Virus record (IMG/VR): IMGVR_UViG_3300032116_014939
Coordinates: 1 to 64,000 of that record
Reading direction: 5' to 3' (one strand)
DNA: 64,000 nt
The notes under the pieces were generated by a model. It saw only the letters and a list, made by a program, of their open reading frames with translations. It was not told the DNA's origin and ran no database searches. The translations under genes were made by a program, and so were the position numbers. This document shows positions 729 to 14,030 of the stretch, one piece after another (positions within the stretch are counted from its first letter, which is position 1; the number at the start of each line of letters is the position of its first letter).

Positions 729-775
729 ACGAAATCAATAATATACACTAGACTTTGTAAAGTCAAAAAAAGTTG

Positions 776-847
776 AGGTCGGAGTTGGAATCGAACCAAC
801 ATAAGGGCTTTTGCAGAACCCCACTTAAACCATTCAGACATCCGACC
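776..847 (-). tRNA. tRNA-Cys(GCA)
   Basis: Cloverleaf; acceptor GGTCGGA/TCCGACC, loop CT-GCA-AA, U73. Confidence 0.93.
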
Positions 848-854
848 TTGTAAG

Positions 855-942
855 CGGAGAGCAGTGGACTCGAACCACGCCCAACTTAATGGGTTACTGT
901 TTAGCAAACATTCGGGGTCACCATTACCCTCCTTTACTCTCC
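855..942 (-). tRNA. tRNA-Ser(GCT)
   Basis: GGAGAGT acceptor, loop TT-GCT-AA, long variable arm, G73. Confidence 0.9.
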
Positions 943-949
943 ATGTTAG

Positions 950-1022
950 TGTGTCTAACCAGATTCGAACTGGTGCTAACAGAACCACAATCTGTCGTGC
1001 TCGCCTCTACACCATAGACACC
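950..1022 (-). tRNA. tRNA-His(GTG)
   Basis: Acceptor GTGTCTA/TAGACAC, loop TT-GTG-GT, encoded G-1, A73. Confidence 0.9.
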
Positions 1023-1124
1023 GTGTAAAAAACACACTCTCAAGCATTCTACTCCCTGCATGACGGAATTGTATCTTACTTAGCCCACCGTCCTCAGTAT
1101 GGGTACTTGAGTTTATGTGTTTTG

Positions 1125-1207
1125 TACCCCTTGTAGGAGTCGAACCTACACGTCTTTAAGACAATGGTTTCTAAGACCACCCTGGTTACCAGTTACAGCA
1201 AAGAGGT
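1125..1207 (-). tRNA. tRNA-Leu(TAG)
   Basis: Loop CT-TAG-AA, long variable arm, TTCGACT T-loop, A73. Confidence 0.9.
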
Positions 1208-1214
1208 AAATAAG

Positions 1215-1301
1215 CGGAAGAGATAGGACTCGAACCTACACATCAGTTTCCCGATACCGGTTTTCAAGACCGGGGCGATACCAATTACGCTTTACTCTTC
1301 C
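1215..1301 (-). tRNA. tRNA-Ser(TGA)
   Basis: GGAAGAG/CTCTTCC acceptor, loop CT-TGA-AA, long variable arm. Confidence 0.92.
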
Positions 1302-1525
1302 AAAGTTCCCCACCCTGAGATTATGGTGAGTAGTCATATCGGTTTTTTTGCTGTTTGAAAAACCTGCTGGGCATCCCCGATAAAAAAGTCAGTTCTTTAC
1401 GTCGGCAGTGATGAACCTATCTACTGTTTTATCCCGAATCGATTGCCTTTGGGAGGCGTTTTTTAACCCTATCCATTGTTAAATGAGTCTTGGATAAAAG
1501 ACTGGTGAGTATCTCTTACTCATTG

Positions 1526-1615
1526 TAGTCAGGACAGGATTCGAACCTGTGCTCCCCATTACAGGGAACGTTGTACAGCCCCCGAAGCGGCTGTGACACC
1601 AATTGCCACCTGACT
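1526..1615 (-). ncRNA. tRNA-like RNA A (anticodon loop replaced by a cUUCGg-capped stem)
   Basis: AGTCAGG/CCTGACT-A acceptor, ACAGG-TTCGAAT-CCTGT T-arm, no 7-nt anticodon loop. Confidence 0.75.
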
Positions 1616-1832
1616 ATATAAAAACACCCTTATCTATCCAACTTACAGGTGTTATGGCTGTCCTCATTGCTGAGTTAGGAATAAACTGTCTTGCTCCCCT
1701 TCGTGATGGGTTTTACCGACCTTAGTAGTCAACTAGAAGGTAATATATATACAAACCTTCAACTCTCCCCTATGGTTATCACACCATTTCTCATCGTATG
1801 GGACATACTATCTGATGATTAGTCAGAACGTG

Positions 1833-1899
1833 TAGTCAGAACAGGATTCGAACCTGCAATCTTCCTTGTTAGGAGCTTTGCCAATTAAGTTACCTGACT
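1833..1899 (-). ncRNA. tRNA-like RNA B (67 nt, 4-nt loop at the anticodon position)
   Basis: AGTCAGG/TCTGACT-A acceptor, intact D-loop and T-arm, TCCT-AACA-AGGA mini arm. Confidence 0.75.
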
Positions 1900-2057
1900 A
1901 TGGTGGTAGGATTGCTTTTTTATAGAAGAGCTCGCCTGCCTCAGAACTTCTTTGAGGATGAGAAGTCCTCTGTGTTGTGAAAGTCGGTAAAAATGCACTT
2001 TTACACCCTTTGTCCTGAACATAAACTATTCCTTTCTCAAGGGAACAACACGTTTAG

Positions 2058-2148
2058 TAGTCAGGGCCGGACTCGAACCGGATACCGTTCTCGACGGATT
2101 AGACAACCTTACGGATTTGGGTCCCTCCCTCATTACGCCCACCTGACT
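2058..2148 (-). ncRNA. tRNA-like RNA C (GUAA tetraloop at the anticodon position)
   Basis: AGTCAGG/CCTGACT-A acceptor, CCGG-TTCGAGT-CCGG T-arm, variable-arm hairpin. Confidence 0.7.
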
Positions 2149-2152
2149 CCGA

Positions 2153-2160
2153 CAAAGATA
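2153..2160 (-). promoter_or_regulatory. Bacteroidota-type -7 promoter box (TATCTTTG) for the second RNA block
   Basis: Matches TAnnTTTG; lies 4 nt upstream of tRNA-like RNA C. Confidence 0.65.
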
Positions 2161-2261
2161 TGGTAAGTTTTTCAATCTACCAAATCTTTTTTTATTCTTC
2201 TCTTCCCCATATTAACCATCCTATGAAGATTCCAATTACAATACCTGATGCCATATTTTTC

Positions 2262-3240: not shown

Positions 3241-3397
3241 AAAAGTGGGTGGAATCAGAGGCCTTCTGTCCACCGAGACCTCGTCGTTGACTTTCGTCAG
3301 AGCGTACCGAGACACTTTTTAAAACCCCATCTTCATCGGATTAACGGACCGACTGCCATATCGGAGGTGGGGGTTGTCCTGTTAATTCAGAACCTCG

Positions 3398-3980: not shown

Positions 3981-4017
3981 AAAAAAAAACCCTGAACTTT
4001 TTTGTAGTCCAGGGTTT
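3981..4017 (-). terminator. Intrinsic terminator (attenuator) between the leader ORF and the tRNA array
   Basis: AAACCCTGGACT-ACAAAAA-AGTTCAGGGTTT hairpin running into a U-tract (9 U in total). Confidence 0.85.
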
Positions 4018-4039
4018 CCTTATATATTTGATGATACGA

Positions 4040-13161: not shown

Positions 13162-14030
13162 AGCCTGAGATTACAGCTTATGTTGAGAATCTTTTGAAGT
13201 ATTATTGTTTCACTTCGTATCCACTTCCTTTTGAGAAGTACTTCTCAGTCACGGTCTTTTAGGTGTACCACTCCTTGAGGTCTAAGTTACTCTCTTCTTA
13301 CTCAACTCTTTCCGAGGTTGCCACCCCAGTTCGTCCTTGCGGGATTAAAGGTTTTTCGTAAAACTACAGTCAGACTTGGGGTCTTTCTGTGCAATGAACG
13401 GCTCATTACTATGTAGTGACCTTTCACCTAAACCTGATGGACACTTTTCCTTAGTTATTTTGTAATAATGTTAGGTTTGTGTAGTAGATGTGTCAGAGTA
13501 GTGGTCCAACATAAGCTCTGTCTCCTTTTGAGCGACAGAATACTAAACTACTCCGTGAAGTGTCCCCACCTCCATATTTCAAGATTACTTCATAAAGAGA
13601 CCTTGGTAGGTCTTCCTTAGGGATAGTAGCGACACCACTCGTTCTCCATCTTACCTTTCGGTTTTAAGTCCTCTATCATATTGGGACCCGCAATAGTGTA
13701 ACTGGATGGTCACATTTCTTACAGAGTTCCTATGGGTTATTCTTATTGTTCTTCCGAACTCAACTTGAGAATCTACTTTCCCAAGTCACCCTCCCATTTT
13801 CCCTACGAAGTTATCCTCGGTACTAAAGGTTTGGTGATATCCCACTTGTGTACTTGAGTTCTCTACCCCTCACGGGGTTTCGAACCGCAGTCTCCTCAAC
13901 ACAGGGGAGACCACTTTATCCTACTTTCGTAGTTTATTTAAGGACCATACACGGCCCATTATCGTTTATCAGATTAAATGTCTCATAATCAACCCGAAGG
14001 TCTCATAATCAACTACTGAATGGATAATCT
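13162..14030 (-). ncRNA. Large (~870 nt) structured ncRNA, probably GOLLD-like
   Basis: No ORF of 60 aa or more; GC higher than the flanks; many GNRA/UUCG hairpins; 11-bp long-range helix; bounded by promoters, boxA and a terminator. Family call rests on size and context only. Confidence 0.7.

What the first reader, a model, noticed from the sequence alone, without database searches (positions are those of the whole stretch)
1526..2148. Three anticodon-less tRNA mimics sharing one acceptor stem
Seen: 1526-1615, 1833-1899 and 2058-2148 all have AGUCAGG/(C/U)CUGACU-A acceptor stems and intact T-arms, but unrelated middles. In each, the anticodon position carries a 4-nt loop instead of a 7-nt loop (UUCG, AACA, GUAA). 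Two keep a long variable-arm hairpin. Copy C starts about where transcription from the 2153-2160 promoter would start. Three different tetraloops with a conserved top half suggest selection rather than decay. Established: A73 and a long variable arm are tRNA-Leu features, and bacterial LeuRS largely ignores the anticodon. Inference: these may be decoys for tRNA-targeting defence toxins, modulators of RelA/synthetases, non-ribosomal aminoacyl donors, or RNase P/Z processing tags that release the neighbouring ncRNAs.
Basis: partly seen in the sequence, partly recalled or inferred. Interest (0 to 1): 0.78.

Follow-up and report, generated by a model that had tools for sequence, protein, structure and literature searches.

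The report
Phage tRNA-Leu look-alikes without anticodons
The three elements are real, conserved members of a large and apparently undescribed family of phage RNAs that keep the top half of a leucine tRNA but carry interchangeable structured inserts where the anticodon should be, so they look like natural tRNA scaffolds or processing handles, not decoders.

Summary
On the minus strand, 1615..1526 (A), 1899..1833 (B) and 2148..2058 (C) each have a 7-bp AGUCAGG/(C/U)CUGACU acceptor stem, A73, an intact T arm and no 7-nt anticodon loop.

They are not decaying pseudogenes. I found 405 copies (345 distinct, 61-173 nt) in 211 uncultured viral contigs. There were only 5 hits, all on short MAG contigs, in about 185,000 prokaryote genomes, and none in 50,697 GenBank phage records. 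Rfam has no family for them other than generic tRNA.

Acceptor, D and T stems covary. The D arm is the type found only in tRNA-Leu. The anticodon and variable region is replaced by diverse inserts that are themselves conserved and covary. Only 3 of 345 copies have a canonical anticodon arm.

The copies always face the same way as neighbouring tRNAs and share their flanks (A-4, A-2, U-1; C74). They are never tightly packed, and they alternate with conserved non-coding RNAs (ncRNAs) that appear in freshwater metatranscriptomes.

Best reading (about 0.5): these are tRNA-shaped scaffolds or processing handles, cut out by the tRNA maturation enzymes, which thereby also free the interleaved ncRNAs. 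Charging by LeuRS is plausible for B and about half the family, but untested. A role as anticodon-nuclease decoys is unsupported.

The parts
1526..1615 (-). Copy A. A 90-nt tRNA-like RNA with a 7-bp acceptor stem, a shortened D arm (GGCA/UGUC with loop AUUGG), an anticodon-position stem capped by UUCG, a long variable-arm hairpin capped by GUAAU, T arm ACAGG-UUCGAAU-CCUGU, and A73.
   Evidence: The homologue L071 is 92.7% identical. It has six differences: four lie in stems and keep the pairing, including G-C to A-U, and the other two lie in the D loop and a linker.
1833..1899 (-). Copy B. A 67-nt minimal tRNA-like RNA with a tRNA-Leu-like D loop (A14, A15, G18, G19), a 4-bp stem with an AACA tetraloop in place of the anticodon arm, a 5-nt variable loop ending in U48, a T arm, a G7.U66 pair, and A73.
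   Evidence: Homologues in L014, L072, L077 and L117 keep UCCUAACAAGGA unchanged while the D and T stems change compensatorily. RNA-library contigs cover it (1713-1901 and 1646-1886).
2058..2148 (-). Copy C. A 91-nt tRNA-like RNA of a distinct subfamily. After the acceptor stem comes helix P2, which encloses a conserved UAAUGA, a D-like hairpin with GG in its loop, and a short hairpin capped by GUAA. A CCGU-CGAGA-ACGG hairpin, a T arm (CCGG-UUCGAGU-CCGG) and A73 follow.
   Evidence: There are 28 distinct homologues, and P2 and the D-like hairpin both covary.
2153..2184 (-). Bacteroidota-type promoter. TTTG lies at 2184-2181 and TAtcTTTG at 2160-2153, placing the transcription start at or near the first base of copy C.
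   Evidence: Read directly from the sequence. The block 2152-2196 is conserved in 6 other loci. Only 15 of 356 family copies have such a motif at this spacing, so C is a first-in-operon case. No promoter assay was done.
1900..2057 (-). Spacer between C and B. It holds a conserved ncRNA (about 2051..1951) closed by the helix GUGUUGU/ACAACAC.
   Evidence: The conserved blocks recur in about 30 loci. A 105-nt metatranscriptome contig matches 1951-2051 with no differences.
1616..1832 (-). Spacer between B and A, holding a conserved ncRNA.
   Evidence: It is homologous to spacers in L014, L117 and L232. RNA-library contigs cover 1636-1814 with 0 differences and 1609-1811 with 1 difference.
1302..1525 (-). 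Spacer between A and tRNA-Ser(UGA), holding a conserved ncRNA.
   Evidence: It is homologous in L011, L047, L102 and L006. An RNA-library contig covers 1352-1511 with 0 differences, and sequencing adapter joins directly at 1509.
775..1301 (-). Downstream part of the same array: tRNA-Ser(UGA), tRNA-Leu(UAG), a 102-nt conserved spacer, tRNA-His, an uncalled probable tRNA-Ser(GCU), and tRNA-Cys.

Best explanation
A, B and C are functional members of a phage-restricted family of tRNA-like RNAs derived from tRNA-Leu. Every member keeps what the tRNA maturation enzymes read: the 7-bp acceptor stem, the T arm, an elbow-forming D arm or D-like hairpin, and the discriminator base. Most have A at the discriminator position (A73). 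The part that reads codons is replaced by an interchangeable structured insert of about 12 to 110 nt.

The elements are transcribed together with true tRNAs and other ncRNAs. Copy C starts its operon at a Bacteroidota-type promoter.

Inferred mechanism: RNase P cuts at their 5' ends and the tRNA 3'-end pathway trims after position 73/74, followed by CCA addition. Each element would then be released as a stable small RNA with defined ends that carries its insert, a natural counterpart of the engineered 'tRNA scaffold'. The same cuts would free the ncRNAs lying between them, as in tRNA punctuation. Without an anticodon the elements cannot decode. Members with the full leucine identity set, such as B, may also be charged by LeuRS.

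Shown: family membership, conservation, covariation, tRNA-Leu origin, shared flanks, and RNA-library contigs that cover copy B and the three spacers.

Inferred: cleavage by RNase P and RNase Z, CCA addition, stability, and what the inserts do.
For: Size and restriction of the family:
- 405 copies (345 distinct) in 211 viral loci.
- 5 hits, all on short MAG contigs, in about 185,000 prokaryote genomes.
- None in 50,697 GenBank phage records.
- No Rfam family other than tRNA.

Structure under selection:
- 11 of 15 acceptor, D and T pairs show compensatory changes; 0 of 500 shuffles reach the observed scores.
- In a search that did not fix the acceptor sequence, 110 of 121 hits have 7/7 acceptor pairs, with 31 acceptor types.
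- The C-type insert helices covary across 28 sequences.
- Homologues of A and B differ by pair-preserving changes.

Non-decoding:
- 3 of 345 have a canonical anticodon arm.
- ARAGORN leaves 75 of 131 uncalled and gives the rest scattered anticodons.

tRNA-Leu origin: the family D arm is found only in tRNA-Leu among 374 true tRNAs.

Same processing context as real tRNAs:
- Always the same strand as neighbouring tRNAs.
- Leader A-4 72%, A-2 74%, U-1 80%, against 63%, 63% and 67% for true tRNAs.
- C74 98% against 99%.

Alternation with ncRNAs:
- 0 of 167 gaps between family copies are 20 nt or less (median 172 nt), against 141 of 332 for tRNA-tRNA gaps.
- The spacers are conserved in other loci.
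- In four independent freshwater RNA libraries the spacers appear as near-identical discrete contigs, while flanking ORFs are uncovered or barely covered. Contigs also run from B into its downstream spacer, as expected of a common precursor.

No protein family is shared by more than 12 of 120 neighbourhoods, which fits use of host enzymes.
Against: - No cleavage site, CCA tail or mature element was observed. The RNA evidence is assembled contigs from metagenomic RNA libraries, which can contain DNA, and contig ends are not mapped RNA ends.
- Pure punctuation or scaffolding does not explain why the acceptor sequence AGUCAGG is kept in 78% of copies found without fixing it, nor why leucine identity elements are so well kept.
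- The ncRNA of the C-B spacer is directly preceded by a tRNA or tRNA-like element in only 7 of about 30 loci, so the coupling is not obligatory.
- Real tRNAs flank some spacers equally well, so dummy tRNAs are not strictly needed.
- The function of every insert is unknown.
Confidence: 0.5

Rival explanations
1. Charged, non-decoding leucine carriers. The point of the family is aminoacylation by host LeuRS. The Leu-RNA would then act off the normal decoding path: as a sink for LeuRS, leucine or EF-Tu, as a donor for a transferase, or as a tmRNA-like entrant into stalled ribosomes.
For: - The family derives from one of the few isotypes whose synthetase ignores the anticodon and variable arm. E. 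coli tRNA-Leu variants lacking both arms are still charged, provided A73 and the D/T-loop contacts remain (PMC9976931).
- The family keeps A73 in 91%, U8 in 96%, U48 in 79%, and a D loop of AAU(U)GGUAG type. The full set is present in 157 of 345 members and nearly so in B.
- The D arm is specific to tRNA-Leu.
- The topology (tRNA top half with an insert replacing the anticodon arm) matches the tRNA-like domain of tmRNA (my own knowledge).
Against: - About half the members, including A (C48, shortened D arm) and the whole C subfamily (no canonical D arm), lack part of the identity set.
- 8% have G73, which is an antideterminant for LeuRS in E. coli tRNA-Ser (PMC9976931).
- No transferase, synthetase or other tRNA-using enzyme is linked to the elements.
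- If only the charged top half mattered, there would be no reason for diverse inserts to be conserved and to covary.
- The identity elements may simply be inherited, because they also build the elbow that RNase P and RNase Z read.
Confidence: 0.25
2. Decoys or sponges for host proteins that bind the acceptor/T-arm/elbow of tRNAs. Examples are defence toxins that modify or cut the 3' end or acceptor stem, or tRNA-sensing triggers. The missing anticodon would keep the decoy out of translation.
For: - Restricted to phages, often in many copies (up to 12 or 13 in one locus).
- A strongly conserved acceptor sequence suggests a reader that recognises sequence.
- The elements sit in tRNA islands, which in other phages counter tRNA-targeting defences (my own knowledge).
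Against: - An anticodon-nuclease decoy is excluded in practice, because the target loop is absent.
- The acceptor does covary in 22% of copies, so its sequence is preferred but not required.
- No host tRNA carries this acceptor together with this T arm (5 stray hits in about 185,000 genomes), so no specific host tRNA is being mimicked.
- A top-half decoy does not need conserved and diverse inserts.
Confidence: 0.12
3. DNA-level cassette boundaries. The conserved 25-28-bp halves would serve mainly as recombination sites that shuffle ncRNA cassettes between phages, and the RNA fold would be incidental.
For: - Inserts and spacers are shuffled between contigs. The same insert occurs with different acceptors, and the same spacer follows different elements.
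- Contig joints link the conserved T-arm segment of one element to another.
Against: - Compensatory changes keep RNA helices intact.
- Strict co-orientation with tRNAs.
- tRNA-type leader and trailer signals.
- The elements are present in RNA libraries.
- No recombinase is linked to them.
Confidence: 0.05
4. Decaying tRNA pseudogenes or chance look-alikes.
For: ARAGORN gives inconsistent calls or none. B and C alone fold no better than shuffled sequence (z = -0.9 and -0.7).
Against: - No chance matches in shuffles.
- Hundreds of homologues with covariation, and inserts that are conserved.
Confidence: 0.02

Closest known systems
Bacterial and phage tRNA-Leu (class II tRNA)
   Same: A 7-bp acceptor stem, A73, U8, a D arm of the type GGCGGAAU(U)GGUAGACGC with G18G19, U48, and a T arm with a UUCGAAU loop. 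Among true tRNAs of the same contigs this D arm is found only in tRNA-Leu.
   Different: There is no 5-bp/7-nt anticodon arm (3 of 345 members) and no Leu anticodon. The variable arm is replaced or absent. The acceptor sequence AGUCAGG, with an A1-U72 pair, was seen on none of the 13 true tRNA-Leu that share this D arm.
Minimalist tRNA-Leu substrates of E. coli LeuRS (Larkin et al. 2002, as summarised in PMC9976931)
   Same: These are tRNA-Leu bodies lacking the anticodon and variable arms but keeping A73 and the D/T-loop contacts. That is essentially the design of copy B.
   Different: Those are laboratory constructs. Charging of the phage RNAs has not been tested, and many family members lack part of the identity set.
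Engineered 'tRNA scaffolds' for expressing recombinant RNAs (Ponchon and Dardel 2007; my own knowledge)
   Same: The insert replaces the anticodon arm. The tRNA body provides processing by RNase P and RNase Z and resistance to nucleases.
   Different: The family here is natural, phage-encoded, multi-copy and derived from tRNA-Leu. The inserts are of unknown function.
MALAT1 mascRNA / MEN-beta tRNA-like elements (Rfam RF01684)
   Same: A tRNA-like structure without a proper anticodon loop. Its cleavage by RNase P and RNase Z defines the end of a neighbouring long ncRNA and yields a small CCA-tailed RNA (my own knowledge).
   Different: These are eukaryotic and unrelated in sequence. Rfam gives no mascRNA match to A, B or C.
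tRNA-like domain of tmRNA
   Same: The same topology: acceptor stem and T arm kept, with the anticodon arm replaced by a helix that leads to inserted domains. The C subfamily resembles it most, since helix P2 leaves directly from the acceptor stem.
   Different: The family has U3-A70 where tmRNA has the G3.U70 alanine identity pair, and it has no mRNA-like reading frame or pseudoknot ring. Neither ARAGORN nor Rfam calls tmRNA here. The genome has a separate tmRNA at 208565-208959.
Phage T4 stable RNAs C and D
   Same: Both are small stable RNAs of unknown function (PMC9697503). That they are encoded in and processed with the T4 tRNA cluster is my own knowledge.
   Different: There are only two of them and they have no known family of modular variants. 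Sequence relatedness was not tested.
Bacterial and phage Y RNA-like YrlA (Rfam RF02553)
   Same: An ncRNA with a tRNA-mimicking module (PMC4201824 is listed; its content is recalled from my own knowledge).
   Different: In YrlA the RNA ends lie in the Ro-binding stem, not in the acceptor stem. There is no YrlA match at A, B or C, only weak sub-threshold hits over true tRNAs.

Membership tests
Canonical tRNA (Rfam RF00005) | 7-bp acceptor stem with an unpaired discriminator | tested here: met
   All three copies meet it. Family-wide, 110 of 121 hits have 7/7 pairs in a search that did not fix the acceptor.
Canonical tRNA (Rfam RF00005) | T arm: 5-bp stem with a UUCRANY loop | tested here: met
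   A and B have ACAGG or GCAGG, then UUCGAAU, then CCUGU. C has a 4-bp CCGG stem with a UUCGAGU loop plus a U.C mismatch.
Canonical tRNA (Rfam RF00005) | D arm with G18 and G19 | tested here: inconclusive
   B is canonical. A has a shortened arm with a 5-nt loop containing GG. C has a D-like hairpin enclosed by an extra helix.
Canonical tRNA (Rfam RF00005) | Anticodon arm: 5-bp stem and 7-nt loop with U33 and a purine at 37 | tested here: not met
   The Rfam alignments delete this arm in A and B. The folds give tetraloops. Only 3 of 345 family members have such an arm.
tRNA-Leu | A73 discriminator | tested here: met
   A, B and C all have A73, as do 91% of the family.
tRNA-Leu | Hinge elements A15:U48, G18G19 and A20a (PMC9976931) | tested here: inconclusive
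   B has A14, A15, G18, G19, A21 and U48. A has C48 and a 5-nt D loop. C has no canonical D arm. The full set occurs in 157 of 345 members.
tRNA-Leu | Leu anticodon (NAG or NAA) in a 7-nt loop | tested here: not met
tRNA-Leu | Aminoacylation by LeuRS | not testable with these tools
   This needs an in vitro charging assay or an in vivo test of acylation state.
tmRNA | G3.U70 alanine identity pair, a tag reading frame with a resume codon, and pseudoknots | tested here: not met
   Position 3-70 is U-A. ARAGORN and Rfam make no tmRNA call here. B's insert is only 12 nt.
mascRNA-type tRNA-like processing element | Match to Rfam RF01684 | tested here: not met
   There is no match at A, B or C, only a 19.6-bit sub-threshold hit over tRNA-Trp.
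mascRNA-type tRNA-like processing element | Cleavage by RNase P and RNase Z that also matures the adjacent ncRNA | not testable with these tools
   The evidence is only indirect: shared tRNA flank signals and discrete spacer contigs in RNA libraries.
YrlA (Y RNA-like) | Match to RF02553; RNA ends in a Ro-binding stem | tested here: not met
   There is no match at the three elements. Their ends lie in the acceptor stem.
New family proposed here (tRNA-Leu-derived anticodon-less scaffold RNAs of phages) | Acceptor AGUCAGG/CCUGACU or a compensated variant; discriminator A73 (G73 in about 8%); C74; T arm; no canonical anticodon arm; variable insert; same strand as tRNAs | tested here: met
   A, B and C meet all of these. 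A, B and C each have named homologues: L071; L014, L072, L077 and L117; L150, L052 and others.

The most novel reading that the evidence does not exclude
Phages of freshwater Bacteroidota carry a modular library of natural tRNA-scaffolded RNAs. A nearly invariant top half that LeuRS could charge gives each RNA processing, stability and perhaps a leucyl or CCA end. Swappable inserts act as aptamer-like modules or decoys against different host or rival targets. Together with GOLLD, a phage tmRNA and the interleaved ncRNAs, this would form an RNA-based toolkit for taking over the host.
Probability: 0.3. Interest if true: 0.88.

Novelty: new variant of a known kind. Interest (0 to 1): 0.78.

Why it matters
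tRNA-like RNAs are known from tmRNA, plant-virus 3' ends, mascRNA and Y RNAs. I found no description of a large phage family that keeps a leucine-tRNA top half and swaps the decoding half for dozens of different conserved inserts. It is absent from Rfam 15, from 50,697 GenBank phage records and from six full-text literature searches.

If the scaffold and punctuation reading is right, phages arrived at the 'tRNA scaffold' trick used in RNA engineering. The inserts would then be a catalogue of small structured RNAs of unknown function, many sitting beside GOLLD and other unexplained ncRNAs.

If the elements are charged by LeuRS, they would be aminoacyl-RNAs that cannot decode, which raises the question of what a non-decoding Leu-RNA does during infection.

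Annotation is also affected. tRNA finders either miss these elements or give them arbitrary anticodons (for example 'tRNA-Pro CGG' for copy A). This inflates and distorts tRNA counts in viral metagenomes.

Tried and rejected
- **Alternative fold with a 7-nt anticodon loop.** ARAGORN forces one only on A, and it needs a mismatched stem. The homologue L071 does not improve it. Family-wide, 3 of 345 copies have a canonical arm.
- **Known RNA families.** Rfam at gathering and at E <= 10 gives only generic tRNA hits for A and B, and nothing for C or the spacers.
- **A linked protein partner.** All-against-all clustering of 2,406 ORFs from 120 neighbourhoods shows no family in more than 12 loci. The top clusters are ordinary phage genes: DUF932, terminase, metallophosphatase, GIY-YIG endonuclease, VapE-like primase. 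The window's own neighbouring ORFs have no informative PHROG hit.
- **A phage CCA-adding enzyme.** None was found in the 242-kb genome.
- **A host tRNA being mimicked.** The element is essentially absent from prokaryote genomes.
- **Cultured phages that carry it.** None was found. Close relatives of the region are also absent from the phage collection.
- **VIPR/vrRNA guide RNAs** (bioRxiv 10.64898/2026.10.15.759431). These are GGYNN tandem units and are unrelated.
- **A promoter in front of every element.** Only 15 of 356 copies have one.
- **Obligatory pairing of one insert type with one spacer ncRNA.** Not found: the modules are shuffled.
- **Literature searches** for anticodon-less phage tRNA mimics found nothing specific.
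- **Not run.** I did not run a LeuRS-RNA complex prediction. Its only control would be shuffled RNA, which cannot separate leucine identity from a generic tRNA shape.
Full report
**1. What is in the window**

The window is the first 64 kb of a 242,064-bp viral contig. The contig is 32% G+C, and CheckV estimates it to be about 82% complete. Between 3956 and 775 the minus strand carries a tRNA array.

- The first seven genes (Asn, Lys, Trp, Thr, Ile, Pro, Phe) are only 5-9 nt apart.
- Next come a 156-nt spacer, Asp, a 59-nt spacer and Gln.
- Two small ORFs follow, then a Bacteroidota-type promoter: TTTG at 2184-2181, 20 nt, then TAtcTTTG at 2160-2153.
- Then the three elements of the finding appear. 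C (2148..2058) is followed by a 158-nt spacer, B (1899..1833) by a 217-nt spacer, and A (1615..1526) by a 224-nt spacer.
- The array ends with Ser(UGA), Leu(UAG), a 102-nt spacer, His, an uncalled Ser(GCU)-like gene and Cys.
- A GOLLD RNA lies at 13162-13555.

**2. Check of the observation**

The shared pattern (AGTCAGG, a gap, GGTTCGARTCC, four bases, CTGACTA) matches exactly the three stated places. It matched in none of 100 shuffles of the window.

- **Copy A** folds into a cloverleaf at -40.1 kcal/mol (z = -3.6). Its anticodon-position stem is capped by UUCG, and it has a long variable-arm hairpin.
- **Copy B** is a 67-nt miniature. It has a normal D arm, a 4-bp stem with an AACA loop, a 5-nt variable loop and a normal T arm.
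- **Copy C** has the same acceptor stem, a T arm and A73, but a rearranged middle (see section 5).

The Rfam tRNA model accepts B (38 bits) and A (29.9 bits) only by deleting the anticodon arm. ARAGORN misses B and C and labels A 'tRNA-Pro (cgg)' through a mismatched stem. The strand is minus.

**3. The elements belong to a large viral family**

- It found only 5 hits, all on short MAG contigs, among about 185,000 prokaryote species genomes. Three of the five are Saprospiraceae, Chitinophagaceae and Bacteroidia.
- A second pattern did not fix the acceptor.

Over the 234 loci fetched I counted 405 copies, 345 of them distinct, in 211 loci. Lengths run from 61 to 173 nt with a median of 93, and one locus holds up to about 13 copies.

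None of 50,697 GenBank phage records holds the family. Rfam 15 has no family for it beyond generic tRNA. Six full-text literature searches found no description.

The hosts are probably freshwater Bacteroidota. This is an inference from the promoter type, the MAG hits, a BT4734-like/DUF3874 protein in one neighbourhood, and the freshwater and lake samples that hold the sequence.

**4. Selection, not decay**

In the set found without fixing the acceptor, 94 of 120 copies have AGUCAGG. The rest include fully compensated stems such as AGUCCUG/CAGGACU, UACCGGG/CCCGGUA, GGUUAGG/CCUAACC and GACCGAG/CUCGGUC. A recount over all fetched loci gave 121 matches to this pattern. Of these, 110 have 7/7 acceptor pairs, with 31 acceptor types.

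On a 46-sequence alignment, 11 of 15 acceptor, D and T pairs show changes on both sides, in 71 cells. None of 500 shuffles and none of the slid-partner controls comes close. One caveat applies: my detector required a paired acceptor, so the 100% pairing there is partly by construction.

The window's own copies show the same pattern against their homologues.

- A and L071 differ at six positions. Four are in stems and keep the pairing, including one G-C to A-U change.
- Homologues of B keep UCCUAACAAGGA unchanged while the D and T stems change compensatorily.
- C and L150 differ by a G.U to A-U change and one loop base.

**5. Which parts are kept and which replaced**

Kept features:
- U8 in 96% of distinct copies.
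- A73 in 91%, and G73 in about 8%.
- U48 in 79%.
- The T loop UUCGAAU in 77%.
- A D arm that occurs only in tRNA-Leu among 374 true tRNAs of 20 isotypes from the same contigs.

Replaced: the anticodon and variable arms. Only 3 of 345 copies have a 5-bp stem with a 7-nt loop, U33 and a purine at 37, which is about what chance hairpins would give. ARAGORN leaves 75 of 131 copies uncalled and scatters the rest over many anticodons.

The inserts range from a 12-nt tetraloop hairpin (B) to multi-hairpin domains of more than 100 nt. Some contain T-arm-like hairpins, and some copies carry an insertion in the D loop.

The inserts form subfamilies that recur in unrelated contigs. The same insert can occur with different acceptors.

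The C subfamily has 28 distinct members. Helix P2 leaves directly from the acceptor stem. P2 encloses a conserved UAAUG, a D-like hairpin with an invariant GG, and a short CC/GG hairpin that takes loops or large insertions. P2 and the D-like hairpin both covary.

**6. Processing context**

Every neighbouring tRNA lies on the same strand as the element. The flanks of family copies and of true tRNAs in the same contigs are practically the same.

| Position | Family copies | True tRNAs |
|---|---|---|
| A at -4 | 72% | 63% |
| A at -2 | 74% | 63% |
| U at -1 | 80% | 67% |
| C at 74 | 98% | 99% |

In both groups position 74 is followed by A/U at 75 and A at 76. On my own knowledge, U-1 and an A-rich leader suit bacterial RNase P.

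Only 15 of 356 copies have a TAnnTTTG box placed to start transcription at +1. Copy C is one of these first-in-operon cases. The genome has no CCA-adding enzyme of its own, and no protein family is linked to the elements. Host enzymes are therefore the likely processors. No cleavage was observed, so this is an inference.

**7. Alternation with other ncRNAs**

Gaps between family copies are never 20 nt or less (0 of 167, median 172 nt). By contrast, 141 of 332 tRNA-tRNA gaps are that short.

The window's spacers are conserved in other loci. The block at about 2051..1951 recurs in about 30 loci. In 7 of these it directly follows a tRNA or tRNA-like 3' end.

Near-identical contigs from four independent freshwater RNA libraries cover these stretches:
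- 1352-1511
- 1636-1814 and 1609-1811
- 1951-2051
- B together with its downstream spacer (1646-1886 and 1713-1901)

The ORF stretch 2638-2979 and the stretch 700-927 have no coverage. The ORF stretch 2182-2637 is covered only thinly, by divergent contigs in one run (X16). One contig carries sequencing adapter directly at 1509. These are assembled contigs from libraries that can hold DNA. They show presence and suggest discrete abundant RNAs, but they do not map RNA ends.

**8. Interpretation**

The best-supported mechanism is that the elements are tRNA-shaped scaffolds or processing handles. The tRNA maturation machinery would excise them, which gives each insert defined ends and a stable body. 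The same cuts would release the interleaved ncRNAs. I put this at about 0.5.

This reading leaves two things unexplained: why the acceptor sequence is so strongly preferred, and why the leucine identity elements are so well kept. The main rival (0.25) is therefore that charging by LeuRS matters. E. coli LeuRS needs A73, A15:U48, G18G19, A20a and the D/T-loop contacts, but neither the anticodon arm nor the variable arm (PMC9976931). B has almost the whole set. A and the C subfamily do not.

| Reading | Probability |
|---|---|
| Scaffold / processing handle | about 0.5 |
| Charging by LeuRS is the point | 0.25 |
| Decoy for proteins that read the acceptor or elbow | 0.12 |
| DNA-level cassette boundary | 0.05 |
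| Decaying pseudogene or chance look-alike | 0.02 |

- The acceptor- or elbow-binding decoy reading remains possible.
- Decoys for anticodon nucleases are not credible, because there is no anticodon loop.
- A DNA-level cassette boundary is contradicted by RNA-level covariation.
- Pseudogene decay is refuted.

**9. Comparison with known systems and verdict**

The elements fail the defining anticodon-arm test for tRNA and for tRNA-Leu. They lack the defining features of tmRNA, and they have no Rfam match to mascRNA or YrlA.

They work most like engineered tRNA scaffolds and like mascRNA-type tRNA-like processing elements. They descend from tRNA-Leu.

I rate the family a new variant of a known kind. 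It is of high interest because of its size, its modular inserts, its restriction to uncultured phages, and its company: GOLLD, a phage tmRNA, and several other conserved ncRNAs.

Noticed in passing
window 13162-13555 (-): A full-length match to the GOLLD RNA model (313 bits). The close relative L117 has GOLLD next to a tmRNA.
   Followed up: partly
window 857-941 (-): A probable tRNA-Ser(GCU) that ARAGORN misses. It has a GGAGAGU/GCUCUCC acceptor stem, a loop UUGCUAA, a long variable arm and a normal T arm, but an aberrant D region. It scores only 23 bits against the tRNA-Sec model.
   Followed up: partly
window 1951-2051, 1616-1832, 1302-1525, 1022-1123, 3241-3396 (all -): The spacers of the tRNA array are ncRNAs conserved in many other viral contigs. 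They have no Rfam match. The first three are covered by near-identical contigs in four freshwater RNA libraries.
   Followed up: partly
window 1820-1828 (-), 4 nt downstream of copy B: The 3' acceptor strand UUCUGACUA is repeated immediately after B, in the context ...UUCUGACUA-CACG-UUCUGACUA. The same 'cacgttctga' trailer follows B-type copies in L014 and L117. It could allow an alternative acceptor register. It remains unexplained.
   Followed up: no
all tRNA genes of the window array and of related loci: True tRNA genes in these phages encode C74 (99%) followed by A/U75 and A76, not CCA. This points to a particular 3'-end pathway in these phages or their hosts.
   Followed up: partly
genome 208565-208959 (+), outside the window: A phage-encoded tmRNA with an unusual predicted tag, AKLSTLGLIRTEEVTVA.
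   Followed up: no
L004, L037, L105, L208 (77 nt); L008, L011, L091, L162 (142-153 nt); L009, L119, L168, L198 (about 155 nt): Other recurrent tRNA-like RNAs occur in the same islands. They have paired acceptor stems and T arms but other acceptor sequences and non-canonical middles, so they may be sister scaffold families.
   Followed up: no
L089 (73 nt), L014 (76 nt), L032 (71 nt): Three family members with the AGUCAGG acceptor do have a canonical 5-bp/7-nt anticodon arm, with anticodons UGU, UGA and UUU. They are either chance hairpins or rare decoding relatives with a Leu-like body.
   Followed up: no
window 3983-4021 (-): A strong terminator-like hairpin (16 pairs, then a run of U) lies just upstream of tRNA-Asn. 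It marks the end of the preceding operon, before the tRNA array.
   Followed up: no
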